This document shows, one piece after another, positions 13,101 to 28,269 of a stretch of 64,000 nucleotides of DNA. The notes below the pieces were generated by a model. It searched no databases. It had not been told where the DNA came from and was given only the letters and a program-made list of their open reading frames with translations. Both the position numbers and the translations under genes were made by a program. Source of the DNA: Diadema antillarum (Eukaryota); NCBI RefSeq assembly GCF_040938485.1, contig NW_027271715.1:434001-498000 (forward strand), given 5' to 3'. Numbering within the stretch: position 1 is the stretch's first letter; every line of letters starts with the position of its first letter.

Positions 13101-16100
13101 ACAATTTTAATGGTAGTTATATCGGCCTGCTAACCAGTTTACAATCTGTCAGACAAACATACGTACTGACAAAAACCTTCCATGAGGGATGAATCTTGTA
13201 TTGTTTTCATAATATGGAGAAAGAGTGAAATCAACCAACAAGTCCATCCACGGCAAATATTTGTGATTTTTAATACATTTTTATACCTTTACGTTTACTA
13301 CAACTACTTCTGATCAGGTTCATATATTTTATTTTATCTCCATAACTTGTCCGGACGCCACTACGAGCTGTGCTGGTGTTTTCGTGATTGACGTACGTGT
13401 TGTACGTTGGTCACCTTCGGTTTGTGTTGTGATGCCTATTATCTTTACCACTTGGAATTCCGGAGAGAGTTATTCTTTCTCTTTTTTTTTCGGAGAAAAA
13501 AGGACCCAATATATGACCACGTAAATGCACATCATTCCAGCCCCGTTGGCGAACAGATAAGTTCTGGAATTACATTACTTGATGTGACGTCACTGCAAGT
13601 AATTTACCGATTTCCATCCTTGCTGCATTAGTCACGGTCATGATCACATGATTGCAATACGACCAATCCCAGACCAGAATTTCTTCCCTTGAACATTCAA
13701 ATTTAGTATTTATACCATTACAACTGTGTCACTGCTGAAGAATAGTTTTCCGGTCGTCTTATCCCGCTAGCGATTTTTTTTTCCGTAACCCTAACGCGTC
13801 GAAATTGCCAATTGTCTCACTTGAGCAAAGACTATCAGTGTACAAGTTAAAATAAAATAAATAATATATAAATAAATAAATAAATAAAAAATGAAAAAAA
13901 TGAAGATTCTTGCGGGGTAGAGATGCTGCCTGTATGAGTTACAATCCATCATGGAGTTTTCAGGAAAAAGTCCAAAAAAAAAAAAAAAACTGAGAAGACG
14001 TAGAACGGAAAAGGCAAGAATGAATGATCGCGATGGTCCACTTGAGTAACATATCTCTTGATTATTGATGGTATCAAAAATTGCACTATAGTCTTATCAA
14101 ATTTTCCGCAACCCACTAAACGGTGGCTACGTTATAGTAACTGATAAAACTGCGTTCATGTGTAATAATACGCTTTAATATAATATACTTCACGGATATC
14201 ACATGCTGAAAATCTAGATGAATCAATAACCTGAAAATACATATACAAGTGTACATGTATTACGGATTAATCCATTAATGAAACTTACATATTCTGTTGA
14301 GGAATCACTCTGTCCTTCAGAATTGCATATCAGTTTACGTGATCAGGAGAATGCGCGCAAATTATTGTATCTTGCTTGAATACCTGAAAAGGAAAATCAA
14401 GTGTCATGAGTTCAAGGCCACTGTTCATGCGTGTGTAATAATTTTGCAGAAGAGCTAACTTATGTAAATGTGACTACATAACTCTCTCCATGGCAGCTTA
14501 ATGTATAGTTCAATTTTTATGCACTGCCTTGCTGCATACAGGGTGAACTTAAGTCTACCACTAACACTACCTGACTACAGAGAATTATCCCAGCATAAAG
14601 ATAAGCGTGCAATGTTTGCCATTATAAGTTCAGTTAGTACACTAGTCTATTTATCCATGAGTTTATCAACAATTATTCATCAACTTCAGTTCCGTTCCTT
14701 TTATTCGTTATTAATCAAATGTGGTATGGCACGACGCGATGTATTATCCTTGGGGATGTGTGTTTGTGTGTGTGTGGGGGGGGGGGGTGGCGTAAAGGTT
14801 ATGTTAAGGATACACTTCCTATAGGAATATCCGATTCCACGTTTTCTTAACTATTTTGTTTTGTTGTTGATCGGTAAATATAAAGAATTACTTGAAATTT
14901 GTGATTATGTATGTGTTCACAGTATTGTGAGTATAAATTATGCTTGTATAATTGTGTATGTAGTAAAAATTGTATCATTTATAATGTGTACATGTACATG
15001 AATATATGTGAGTTTGTGCATGTATGTAGATATTCCTATGTGCACGCCCATGTACCAACAAAAAGAATTTCCTAAATGAACAATAGATGAATCTGAAATC
15101 TGAAATCGGAATGCCATGACGTCTTTAGCAAGGCATTTTATCGCTAAAGCTGCTCTAATTCCACAGAATGGTTACGAAACAAAACAAAATAGAACAGAAA
15201 ACAGCACGCATAAAACTAGCCAGTTTTAACAGAACTCTAAAATGAACATTTTGATATTACTGCCTGCAAGCCTACATTATAAGACATGGCTATACAACCA
15301 AAAACATAACAGATACAAGAAATTTGATGAAGGGTAATATCGAGAGTAAGGCCTTGGTCGAGAACATTGTGGATATTTCAAATCATGCTTAACGATGATG
15401 TTTTAACTCACCATTTTCCACGTGGTAGGAATCTGCGGGGTCTTGATATTATGAAGTGGACAAAATAATTTTGAAGTCAGAGTTGCAGTAAGCCGCTACG
15501 AAAAGCCTCAGAAGAGCTGATCTGCTATGGAAATGGAATTTGCGCTAGATGCTCAGCTCAAACACGCATGAACGAGCTGTACAATGAGCCATCTGGGAGT
15601 CAACTTATGTGCACATAAGTTTGCACGACTCAACAATTCATTGAATTCATAAATCATGTTCAAGAAAAGAATGAACATGCCCACACCAGGTGACCAAATT
15701 ACTGGGTCCGTGAATTGACACTCTAGGAAACATCCATGTCATTATTTTGCATCGAATGTATTCTATGGATTAATAGGCGTTTTAAAAAAAATTTCCACTT
15801 TTGATTCTTAATAATTCAGTAACTATATATCAGATAACACTATCATTGATATGGGAGATAGTTGTATAGTGTACAATTTCGTTGGAGGTGGTTTAAAACA
15901 CAAATCAGTTTCATGAAATCCATGATCAATTTCACAGTTAGGTTACAGATTTTGCTCTATTTCCAACCCTGTGTACAAAATTTTCACTTTACACAGGGGT
16001 CAATGGGTGTGTATGGGAGTATGTGGTTAACACCCTGACATTGGTGTTGAACAATAGCCAGGGTTTTAATGCTTTATTATTTATTCATGAGAAATTCCAC

Positions 16101-26766: not shown

Positions 26767-28269
26767 GCCGTTGTTATGACAGTTCACAAGGCGGCGTGCC
26801 ATTCTCACATTCTAATCTGATTCTGTGGTTAGCAGACGACCATGGTACTGTATACAAGAAAGCAACACAAGTATCGCAACCAACTAGTACACTGATAGTC
26901 TTTGCTCAAGTGCCACAATTGACAATTTCGACGCGTTAGGGTTACGGAAAAAAAAATCGCATCCCGCTACAGGTATCAGTGTCCGCTATCGTTACGCTAG
27001 AAGCAAACTGGCCAACGTGCATTTCACTAAAGAGTTAGCGCGCCGCCTAGCGGGCACCAACGTGACAGCCTACTCGCTACATCCGGGAACTATCTTTACG
27101 AATATCTTGAAGTCAACATTGACTACAGTGGGGAAGAAAATTCGGTATTATCTCTTCACGCCGTTGCTGTGGTAAGTTCTTGATTCAAATCTAATATTTT
27201 CATGAGTTGGGAAAGGAAAGGATGTACCACCACCACCCCCCCCCACCCCTTCCTAAGAAAGAAAGAAAAATATGTTAATAGCACTTTGTAGTTGTGATTA
27301 TAGTCACAGTCTTTGAGTGAAGTCAGTCTTGATTAGATTCAGTGTGATTAATTTCGTTTTGTTGTGACCACATTAAGTGCTGCAGCTATCTGCGTCATTT
27401 CCATTCCGAAAGTCCAATAATGCAGACAACAGTATTCCTCAGTGCTTCTATAATTTAGCTGCTGCTATAATTTTCAGTTTACTATTTCTGACTCTGACAA
27501 CAATAGCAATAACGTTAAAAGAGTATTAAGTGGTCTCATTGATGCGATGCTTATATCTGTCTGTTAGTAGGCTAAGATGTTTTGAGGGGTAAATTTGCGT
27601 TCTTTGTGTAAATATGTTTTCTTGACCTCGTGATGAGTTGTATTGGCTTTATCTTTATATTCTAATTGAAAGTTTCATCGTTATTCGCTCTATTCCTGTT
27701 ATCAAAGTAACAAATTCAGATTCTGTCGTGCCTTCAAAACTAAAAAAAAAAACCAAAAGTCAAAGAATGGGGAGGTATATGTAGCTGAATGACATAGTCA
27801 CTTCTAACACAGAAAAAATAAAGTAATCTGCAAACGATAATCGTAAATAATTACTATAGGCATTCAGAAAAATAGACTCCCATTCCAGTACTCTGAAGAT
27901 CGGTTATGTCATTTTTCGACTGAAATCACTGACTGTAGAATCTCGCATTCGCTTTGTCTTTACTTCGTTTTGTTTGCAATGAAATTATTTTTGTTTCATT
28001 GTGTCATACTTCAACTATAGCAAGAGTGCAATATCTGTGATATTTATCTTATTGCTGTCAGGTTGTTTCTACTGAGTGAGAAGGACGGAGCCCAGACAAC
28101 AATCTACTGTGCCATTGACGAATCGGTCACACAACATAGCGGTGGATATTTCGCAAACTGTCAGCTGGCCAAGGAGTCTAAGTTGGCCAAGGACATGGCG
28201 CTCGCCAAGCAACTCTGGGACGTCAGCTGCGAAGCGACTGGCATCGACCCTAACAAACTCTCGGCATGA
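10192..28269 (+). CDS. RDH copy 2: RDH11/12/13/14-like SDR, 5 exons, 352 aa; intron 3 expanded to 13.9 kb by a TIR element
   Basis: Exons 10192-10393, 12214-12456, 12858-13064, 26973-27171, 28062-28269; 1059 nt in frame, TGANAGIG and YARSK intact. Removing the 13770-26960 element and one TSD restores a 708-nt intron 3 homologous to that of copies 3 and 4. Expression is uncertain because the insertion sits at the exon-4 acceptor. Confidence 0.85.
13585..13592. promoter_or_regulatory. Candidate intronic CRE palindrome (TGACGTCA), conserved in intron 3 of copies 2-4
   Basis: GTGACGTCACTGCA at 13584, 38230 and 56365, about 185 nt upstream of the original exon-4 acceptor in each copy. A CCAAT follows at 13663 and 38287 and is mutated to CGAAT in copy 4. 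Confidence 0.35.
16660..16855 (-). mobile_element. 3' fragment of an L2/Crack-type LINE
   Basis: [37 protein letters not shown] matches the typical L2/Crack ORF2 C-terminal pattern (xGPxxWNxL...FKxxLK). Confidence 0.65.
19385..19732. mobile_element. Kolobok-like MITE (TTAA|AGG...CCT), same family as 44262-44622
   Basis: TTAA|AGGTCC start and ...ATGCCT|TTAC end; internal homology to 44262-44622 and 33140-33225. Confidence 0.55.
20177..23780. repeat. GACGT-rich hierarchical tandem array within a degenerate TIR element, nested in the 13-kb transposon
   Basis: Units of about 158-193 bp recur at 21531, 21716, 21909, 22069, 22254, 22444, 22602, 22787, 22975. They are built from roughly 45-50-bp subrepeats and grouped into a 533-538-bp higher-order repeat. 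Ends CTCAGCTAGCAGACG...TCAAAAAGACGTC and GACGTCATTTTGAAGTCGTGGCCAGTTGG are weak inverted repeats. Confidence 0.85.
20355..21114. mobile_element. 760-bp MITE, 44-bp TIRs, 4-bp TSD ATTT (Sola1-like AWWT target)
   Basis: GTGACCCGCTACAACAAAATG... matches the right end at 40/44. ATTT at 20351-54 and 21115-18. Removing the element rejoins the GACGT repeat. Confidence 0.85.
25378..25847. mobile_element. Degenerate Kolobok-like MITE related to 42658-43226
   Basis: TTAA|AGGAAACCAAAACCCA...TGGGTTTGGGTTTCCT; shares the internal GGATTGAGTGAAxGCAGCAACATTAGT block; right TSD degraded. Confidence 0.65.

What the first reader, a model, noticed from the sequence alone, without database searches (positions are those of the whole stretch)
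13761..26969. 13.2-kb transposase-less TIR element with a 9-bp TSD (giant Mutator/Pack-MULE-like) inside an RDH gene
Seen: 79-bp inverted repeats 13 kb apart (outer 38 bp identical, 4 mismatches overall), bracketed by an exact ATCCCGCTA duplication. Removing the element rejoins an intron whose conserved GTGACGTCACTGCA motif lies about 185 nt from the acceptor, as in copies 3 and 4. Known: 9-bp TSDs are typical of Mutator/MULE (also some Merlin); hAT and P give 8 bp. Inference: the whole 13 kb, with satellite, MITEs and LINE debris, either moved as one non-autonomous unit or accumulated cargo after insertion. Well-preserved ends around old, decayed cargo favour mobilisation of a pre-loaded element. 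Such large cargo-carrying MULEs are well known in plants and little described in marine invertebrates.
Basis: partly seen in the sequence, partly recalled or inferred. Interest (0 to 1): 0.8.

Follow-up and report, generated by a model that had tools for sequence, protein, structure and literature searches.

The report
Polymorphic non-coding foldback-family transposon insertion
The 13.2-kb block is a real insertion, absent from a second contig and from two other samples, of an enzyme-less transposon family known in kind from sea urchins; its "cargo" is the family's own non-coding backbone plus later nested transposons, so it is a well-documented but ordinary case.

Summary
There are 79-nt inverted ends (75/79 paired, outer 38 identical) and an exact 9-bp duplication, ATCCCGCTA.

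- **Empty site.** A collinear contig of the same assembly (C1396) carries one ATCCCGCTA. So do contigs from two independent sequencing samples. The insertion is real and probably polymorphic.
- **Family.** The ends belong to a family with about 335 ends in the genome, mostly paired 8-14 kb apart. 13.2 kb is therefore normal, not giant.
- **Target.** Other copies show 9-bp duplications. 28 flanks give the target nnCCSGGnn, centred on the 9 bp.
- **Structure.** Many copies are 9-10 kb palindromes without ORFs (foldback type). The window copy belongs to an asymmetric 8.2-kb subfamily.
- **Interior.** It is the subfamily backbone, including the 185-bp satellite, plus two nested elements. One is a 4.33-kb fragment of a very young 10.2-kb transposon, fused to the left end by a deletion. 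The other is a young 0.77-kb MITE. All three nested junctions are unique in the genome.
- **What fails.** There are no host gene fragments, so it is not Pack-MULE-like.
- **What stays open.** No transposase partner was found, so the Mutator/Foldback label rests on the 9-bp duplication and on structure. Whether the nested pieces arrived with the element or afterwards is unresolved.

The scan had already noted this kind of foldback element elsewhere in this genome.

The parts
13761..13769 (.). Left copy of the 9-bp target-site duplication, ATCCCGCTA
   Evidence: A single copy is present at the empty sites.
13770..13848 (+). Left terminal inverted repeat (79 nt). This is the conserved terminal module of the family.
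   Evidence: It is 97-99% identical to 40+ scored copies. Its 25-mer occurs 166 times forward and 169 times reverse in the genome, against 0 for the control.
13848..18175 (+). Nested fragment: the right-hand 4.33 kb of a 10.2-kb non-coding TIR transposon, called 'Y' here. Y has ends TACACACTAAGAAAAAA and 2-bp duplications (TA in three copies, AA in one). The fragment is truncated and fused to the left TIR with 1 bp of microhomology.
   Evidence: The TIR|Y and Y|backbone junctions are unique in the genome. The fragment has 7 private substitutions.
18178..20345 (+). Left interior of the asymmetric subfamily backbone
   Evidence: It is 90-94% identical to C599:765263-767455, C1070:994207-996061, C103:519530-521385 and C337:774188-776264. 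In C103 and C337 these stretches lie inside mapped 8.2-kb TIR pairs, and in C599 and C1070 next to right-arm matches.
20354..21115 (.). Nested 0.77-kb MITE with 57-nt inverted ends, inserted into satellite-like sequence
   Evidence: 97-99% identical, about 9,400 first-look candidates. The junction is unique.
21145..23100 (+). 185-bp CpG-rich tandem repeat (about 10 units). It is an expansion of a unit present once in the palindromic relatives.
   Evidence: (matches L031 3956-4167).
22904..24733 (+). Inner backbone region shared with the central part of palindromic copies. It contains a (CA)n tract at 24247-24328.
   Evidence: 75% identity to L031 3978-4888 and neighbouring blocks.
24718..26881 (+). 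Right arm of the element
   Evidence: It is 95% identical to C543:1310683-1312785, 88-92% to C499, C599, C103 and C1070, and 72-80% to both arms of the palindromic copies.
26882..26960 (-). Right terminal inverted repeat
26961..26969 (.). Right copy of the 9-bp target-site duplication
26970..27172 (+). Splice acceptor CAG followed by an SDR/RDH exon. The insertion sits 3 nt upstream of the exon.
   Evidence: adh_short, E = 5e-6.

Best explanation
The block is one insertion of a non-autonomous cut-and-paste DNA transposon.

**Family.** All members share a conserved terminal module of about 80 nt. They make 9-bp staggered target cuts at GC-rich sites, nnCCSGGnn. There are about 335 ends in this assembly, which several copies with identical flanks on two contigs suggest holds both haplotypes. 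Many members are 9-10 kb near-perfect palindromes, the foldback architecture. The window copy belongs to an asymmetric 8.2-kb subfamily with a distinct left interior, a 185-bp satellite and a right arm.

**This copy.** It landed in the polypyrimidine tract of an intron of an SDR/RDH paralog, 3 nt before the exon. It is missing from a collinear second contig and from two other samples.

**Why it is 13.2 kb.** The backbone was hit by a very young 10.2-kb transposon. A deletion of about 6.8 kb then removed the left part of that intruder and 0.6-0.9 kb of the left subterminal backbone. This fused the intruder to position 79 of the left end. A 0.77-kb MITE inserted as well, and the satellite gained a few units.

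**Mechanism (inferred, not shown).** A transposase supplied in trans binds the conserved terminal module. It is most likely of the Mutator/Foldback (Phantom or Rehavkus-like) type.
For: - **Ends, duplication and empty sites:**
- **Family size and spacing:**
- **Palindromic relatives without ORFs:**. L031 has arms of 2.9 kb at 90%, and L032 has arms of 4.3 kb at 97%.
- **9-bp duplications in other copies:** GAGCGGCGC 9/9, GGCCAGGCC 9/9, CCCCCGGAT/CCCCCGGCT 8/9.
- **Symmetric target logo centred on the 9-mer:**
- **Terminal module conserved far more than the interior:** the module is 97-99% identical across subfamilies whose arms are only 72-80% alike. This is what selection for transposase recognition would give.
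- **Backbone shared with sister copies:**
- **Nested elements and unique junctions:**
- **Size accounting:** 8.2 kb, minus about 0.9, plus 4.33, plus 0.77, plus about 0.5, comes to about 13 kb. This uses C103 coordinates.
- **Literature:** foldback elements are known in sea urchin. Most are placed in the Mutator superfamily and give 8-10 bp duplications (PMC4079207). A family with FB-like ends, 9-bp duplications and a FLYWCH-MULE transposase has been described (PMC3169594). MULE duplications are 8-11 bp, and Rehavkus gives 9 bp and carries a minisatellite (PMC6446971).
Against: - No transposase was linked to these ends. None of the MULE, IS1595/Merlin or FLYWCH hits in the genome lies in or near the 100 listed perfect-TIR places. 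Only part of the TIR list is visible, and the candidate loci could not be fetched.
- The window copy itself is not a palindrome. Beyond the 79-nt ends there is no inverted homology between its left interior and right arm. 'Foldback' therefore describes its relatives, not this copy.
- C1396 could be a large segmental duplicate rather than the other haplotype. In that case polymorphism rests on X1 and X2 alone.
- One pair of ends (C472) shows no duplication, and one (C1086) shows only 6/9.
Confidence: 0.8

Rival explanations
1. Pre-loaded composite. The nested Y fragment, the deletion and the MITE arose at a donor site. The finished 13.2-kb composite then transposed as one unit into the RDH intron.
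For: - The insertion is absent from C1396, X1 and X2, so it may be rare and young.
- The X1 empty-site contig has 0 mismatches over 807 nt of left flank. The Y fragment has already gathered 7 private substitutions in 4.33 kb. This hints that the insertion is no older than the nesting.
- Cut-and-paste leaves no donor copy, so the unique junctions do not argue against this reading.
- Short derivatives of 0.57-0.75 kb show that little more than the ends is needed in cis.
Against: - All three nested junctions are unique in the genome, so there is no sign that the composite ever multiplied.
- Logan contigs can be chimeric between haplotypes, and X1 coverage is low (about 6x).
- The right flank differs by 6% between C827 and C1396, so haplotypes here can be old enough for in-place accumulation.
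- It is untested whether 79 nt of left end suffices for mobilisation.
Confidence: 0.42
2. The family belongs to a superfamily other than Mutator/Foldback. Merlin gives 8-9 bp duplications, and the partner could also be an undescribed transposase. On this reading the foldback shape arose independently, as in Galileo of the P superfamily.
For: - No MULE-domain ORF was found inside or near any listed copy.
- The foldback architecture is known to be polyphyletic (PMC4079207, PMC3169594).
- Many intact IS1595/Merlin-type frames exist in this genome.
Against: - None of the Merlin-type hits lies within the listed TIR pairs either.
- A 9-bp duplication together with long arms and internal tandem repeats is the classic Foldback/Mutator combination (PMC4079207, PMC3169594, PMC6446971).
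Confidence: 0.2
3. Assembly artefact: a false join placed repeat sequence into the intron.
For: No contig of X1 or X2 was seen bridging from the unique flank into the TIR.
Against: - A misjoin does not create an exact 9-bp duplication flanking matched inverted ends.
- The duplicated site fits the family's target consensus.
- Both flanks are collinear with C1396.
- Short-read contigs break at repeats, so the lack of bridging contigs carries little weight.
Confidence: 0.03

Closest known systems
Foldback (FB) elements of Drosophila and FB-like families such as Tetris (D. virilis) and Tm1 (Meloidogyne)
   Same: - Mostly non-coding elements.
- Long inverted arms in many members and internal tandem repeats.
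- 9-bp (8-10 bp) target duplications.
- Size heterogeneity and MITE-like short derivatives.
- The autonomous partner is rare or missing (PMC4079207, PMC3169594).
   Different: - The arms here reach 2.8-4.3 kb and are largely unique sequence, not built from short repeats.
- A strong CCSGG-centred target preference is seen here. Tm1 shows none (PMC3169594).
- The window copy's subfamily is asymmetric and shares only about 80 nt of inverted ends.
- No sequence similarity to these families was tested.
TU foldback elements of the sea urchin Strongylocentrotus purpuratus (Liebermann et al. 1983, as cited in PMC4079207)
   Same: - The host group is echinoids.
- From my own recollection of the 1980s papers, which I did not check here: a modular structure with conserved outer ends, variable middle segments and insertions of other repeats.
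   Different: No TU sequence was available to compare. From memory, TU elements were reported with 8-bp duplications and repeat-built outer domains. Whether this family descends from them is untested.
Non-autonomous MULEs / Pack-MULEs of plants
   Same: A 9-bp duplication, ends conserved much better than interiors, and mobilisation in trans.
   Different: Pack-MULEs carry captured host gene fragments, and none is present here. The interior is family-specific non-coding DNA plus nested transposons.
Rehavkus and Phantom groups of the Mutator superfamily
   Same: A 9-bp duplication. Rehavkus carries a minisatellite inside the element. Phantom transposases (FLYWCH + MULE) have been found within FB-like ends (PMC6446971, PMC3169594). 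An earlier scan note reports a PHD-FLYWCH-MULE element in this genome.
   Different: No coding copy with these ends was found. The FLYWCH and MULE hits on contig C72 are more than 7 Mb from the only listed TIR on that contig.

Membership tests
Foldback-type transposon (structural class) | Long inverted arms that make up most of the element | tested here: inconclusive
   Met by many family members. L031 has arms of 2.9 kb at 90% plus 0.9 kb at 83%, and L032 has arms of 4.3 kb at 97%. Not met by the window copy, where only the 79-nt ends are inverted.
Foldback-type transposon (structural class) | Internal or subterminal tandem repeats and no coding capacity | tested here: met
   A 185-bp array of about 10 units. 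No ORF of 150 aa or more and no Pfam hit.
Mutator/MULE superfamily (including the Foldback/Phantom branch) | Target-site duplication of 8-11 bp, typically 9 bp | tested here: met
   Window 9/9. Two other copies are 9/9, one is 8/9 and one is 6/9 with a 4-bp loss. The symmetric target logo is centred on the 9-mer.
Mutator/MULE superfamily (including the Foldback/Phantom branch) | An autonomous member with the same ends that encodes a MULE-type DDE transposase | tested here: inconclusive
   MULE-domain frames exist in the genome, up to 1,201-1,263 aa. None lies within or near the 100 listed perfect-TIR places. The remaining 235 TIR places were not listed, and the MULE loci could not be fetched.
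Pack-MULE | Captured host gene fragments between the ends | tested here: not met
   The ORFs tested from the backbone, plus the one long ORF in the Y fragment, gave no Pfam hit below E = 0.009. The whole interior is accounted for by family backbone and two nested transposons.
Merlin superfamily | An IS1595/IS1016-type transposase in autonomous copies, with 8-9 bp duplications | tested here: inconclusive
   The duplication length is compatible. 94 PF12762 hits exist in the genome, but none lies within the listed TIR pairs.
Active (currently mobile) transposon family | Presence/absence polymorphism with a clean empty site | tested here: met
   Empty site on C1396 and in X1 and X2 contigs. Caveat: it was not shown that C1396 is allelic.

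The most novel reading that the evidence does not exclude
A foldback/Mutator-like family is still jumping in this sea urchin and has an unusually strict CpG-containing target, nnCCSGGnn. It can carry 13 kb of DNA, including fragments of unrelated transposons, with only about 80 nt of one end intact. That would make it a vehicle for transposon-in-transposon hitchhiking. Because of where it lands, it would also be a source of splice-site mutations in a recently duplicated RDH gene cluster.
Probability: 0.3. Interest if true: 0.5.

Novelty: new member of a known kind. Interest (0 to 1): 0.3.

Why it matters
This is a fully documented presence/absence insertion of a large non-coding transposon, 3 nt from a splice acceptor in one of four tandem RDH/SDR paralogs. 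It offers a natural test of how such an insertion affects splicing.

The family-level results may help annotate echinoid genomes and search for the missing transposase:
- about 335 ends in the assembly;
- a conserved terminal module of about 80 nt on interiors that differ by 25%;
- a strict CCSGG-centred 9-bp target;
- palindromic and asymmetric subfamilies side by side.

None of this changes what is known about foldback or Mutator elements.

Tried and rejected
- **Autonomous partner.** I looked for MULE (PF10551), Merlin/IS1595 (PF12762) and FLYWCH (PF04500) hits and compared their places with the listed TIR places. There was no co-location.
- **Coding potential of odd TIR-adjacent interiors** (L008, L010, L016, L028, L030). 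I found only nested repeats and no long frames.
- **Pfam scan of short ORFs in the backbone and in element Y.** Nothing was found.
- **Metagenome scan for the TIR 25-mer.** There were 0 hits.
- **Inverted homology between the window copy's left interior and right arm.** None was found, so I dropped the idea that this copy is itself a decayed palindrome.
- **The first impression that the left 7 kb is unrelated DNA.** I rejected it once sister copies matched 18178-20345.
- **'LINE debris'.** I rejected this because the large foreign piece has 17-nt inverted ends and a 2-bp duplication.
- **Sea-urchin TU papers.** I could not locate them in the library.
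Full report
**Observation**

The two arms are at 13770-13848 and 26882-26960: 79 nt, 95% complementary, 13,033 nt apart. Read directly, the outer 38 nt are identical, with four mismatches further in. ATCCCGCTA abuts both ends, at 13761-13769 and 26961-26969. The element is 13,191 bp, or 13,200 bp with one duplication copy. 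It has no ORF of 150 aa or more and no Pfam domain.

**The insertion is real and has an empty counterpart**

- Within the same assembly, window 13050-13769 matches C1396:199231-199953 at 99%. Window 26961-27700 matches C1396:199945-200682 at 94%. The two matches overlap by exactly the 9 bp. Further matches on C827 and C1396 stay collinear for more than 190 kb. C1396 is therefore either the other haplotype or a large duplicate.
- Contigs of two public runs from different samples and studies (X1 record 5, X2 record 13) cover 12963-13769. They then continue with CAGGTATCAGTGTCCGCTATC..., the sequence that follows the right duplication copy.
- The paralogous gene copies 3 and 4 in the window align across the site. 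Each has one related 9-mer directly before the acceptor CAG|G.
- The downstream exon (26975-27172) matches adh_short.

**The ends define a family**

A 100-nt query gave 377 candidates, and the 40 scored were 95-100% identical. A 25-mer from the end occurs 166 times forward and 169 times reverse with up to 2 mismatches, against 0 for the control. The places are overwhelmingly +/- pairs 8-14 kb apart, with rare short pairs (0.6 kb) and long pairs (18-26 kb). So 13.2 kb is ordinary for this family. Several copies recur with identical flanks on two contigs. This fits an assembly that keeps both haplotypes.

**Target site**

Duplications in other copies:

| Copy | Duplication |
|---|---|
| C1187 (0.75-kb copy) | GAGCGGCGC, 9/9 |
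| C1729 | GGCCAGGCC, 9/9 |
| C214 | CCCCCGGAT / CCCCCGGCT, 8/9 |
| C1086 | 6/9, with a 4-bp loss |
| C472 | none; this pair sits against another element end |

Twenty-eight distinct flanks give C at -6 (27/28), G at -4 (27/28), C or G at -5, mostly C at -7 and mostly G at -3. This is nnCCSGGnn, a palindrome centred on the middle of the 9-mer. That is what a symmetric transposase complex making 9-bp staggered cuts would produce. The window's ATCCCGCTA fits this pattern.

**Architecture of relatives**

Five fetched copies of 9-12 kb are near-perfect palindromes without long ORFs. L031 has arms of 2.9 kb at 90% plus 0.9 kb at 83%. L032 has arms of 4.3 kb at 97% around a 0.4-kb loop. Both of their arms match only the right part of the window element (21145-26960) at 72-80%, while the terminal ~80 nt are 96-99% identical. 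The 185-bp unit that forms the window's satellite is present once in those copies (L031 3956-4167).

**Architecture of the window copy**

- The right arm is 95% identical to C543 (L052) and 88-92% identical to C499, C599, C103 and C1070.
- The stretch 18178-20345 is 90-94% identical to sequence in the same sister copies. In C103 and C337 it lies inside mapped TIR pairs 8.2 kb apart.
- The window copy therefore belongs to an asymmetric 8.2-kb subfamily: end, left interior, satellite, right arm, end. It has no inverted homology beyond the ends.

**The foreign pieces**

- **Element Y.** 13848-18175 is the right 4.33 kb of a 10.2-kb non-coding element. Y has 17-nt inverted ends (TACACACTAAGAAAAAA) and 2-bp duplications (TA in three copies, AA in one). 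There are at least 400 candidate copies, and the four full-length copies compared are about 99% alike. Other copies continue leftward where the window copy stops, so the window copy is truncated. It is fused to position 79 of the left end with 1 bp of microhomology.
- **MITE.** 20354-21115 is a 0.77-kb MITE, 97-99% identical to thousands of copies.
- **Junctions.** TIR|Y, Y|backbone and MITE|satellite each occur once in the genome. The sister copies lack these insertions, and the composite has not multiplied.
- **Age.** The Y fragment has 7 private substitutions in 4.33 kb, so it is very young.
- **Size accounting.** 8.2 kb, minus about 0.9 kb deleted, plus 4.33, plus 0.77, plus about 0.5 kb of extra satellite, explains the 13.2 kb.

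**One jump or accumulation in place?**

This stays open.

- For accumulation in place: the unique junctions, and the 6% divergence between C827 and C1396 on the right flank, which allows an old polymorphism.
- For a single jump of the finished composite: the insertion is absent from three other sampled haplotype sources. The X1 empty-site contig is also identical to the window over 807 nt of left flank, which would be unlikely if the insertion predated the Y insertion. That contig could be a haplotype chimera at about 6x depth.
- I put the two readings near even, at 0.42 for the pre-loaded composite.

**Superfamily**

- No transposase was tied to the ends. MULE-domain frames exist in the genome, as do Merlin-type frames and a few FLYWCH frames. 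None lies in or near the 100 listed perfect-end places.
- The other 235 places are not listed, and the candidate loci could not be fetched.
- The Mutator/Foldback assignment therefore rests on three things. These are the 9-bp duplication, the foldback architecture of relatives and the internal tandem repeats.
- The literature places most foldback elements in Mutator, while noting that the architecture is polyphyletic (PMC4079207, PMC3169594, PMC6446971).

**Species and earlier notes**

- Earlier notes of this scan call the genome Diadema antillarum. I did not verify the species.
- They also describe foldback elements with 185-bp units elsewhere in this genome, which agrees with my reading.
- The end module and element Y also occur at high depth in contigs labelled as another organism (X3).

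**Verdict**

This is a real, probably polymorphic insertion of a non-autonomous foldback-family transposon. It is a new member of a known kind, not a giant Pack-MULE.

Noticed in passing
window 13848-18175; full copies at L048+L041 (C5:352623-362840) and on C979, C284 and C1551: 'Y' is a 10.2-kb non-coding TIR element with ends TACACACTAAGAAAAAA and 2-bp duplications (TA in three copies, AA in one). It has at least 400 candidate copies, and the four full-length copies compared are about 99% identical, which points to a very recent burst. Its superfamily is undetermined and its two ORFs of 122 and 145 aa have no Pfam hit.
   Followed up: partly
window 20354-21115: A 0.77-kb MITE with 57-nt inverted ends (TGTGACCCGCTACAAC...). 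It has about 9,400 first-look candidates in the genome at 97-99% identity.
   Followed up: partly
L031 9142-9146; L037 216-220; also L019, L020 and L022 (contig C1241): Two ends of the family lie head to head, separated by only 3 bp (CTC/GAG). The arrangement recurs three times on C1241. It may be insertion at an existing end, a reversed-ends product copied by segmental duplication, or an end-to-end joint.
   Followed up: no
window 13522-13682: The intron stretch holding the 'conserved' GTGACGTCACTGCA / TGACGTCA motif matches more than 20 other loci at 70-85% (141 candidates). It has loose contig ends at 13562 and 13596, so it is itself part of a small dispersed repeat.
   Followed up: partly
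window 13770-13848: The conserved terminal module contains GTAACCCTAACG, which is one telomere-like CCCTAA unit, after a T9 run. Whether this is part of the transposase binding site is unknown.
   Followed up: no
window 26935-26975: The insertion replaces the pyrimidine tract of the acceptor with an A-rich element end. Only ATCCCGCTA remains before CAG, so splicing of RDH copy 2 on the occupied allele may be impaired. This was already noted by the scan (s1-215312).
   Followed up: no
G000 contigs C4:3620923, C46:3962254, C525, C590, C634, C765, C1149, C1931: A multi-copy, stop-free 537-558-aa frame gives the same weak MULE match in each copy (26 bits). It looks like a young Mutator-type family. 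No perfect foldback-family end lies on C4 or C46.
   Followed up: no
L038 1352-3467 (C1729): One 12.3-kb family copy carries a tandem array with a period of about 256 bp (86-91% between units) that the other copies lack. It is another case of in-element satellite expansion.
   Followed up: no
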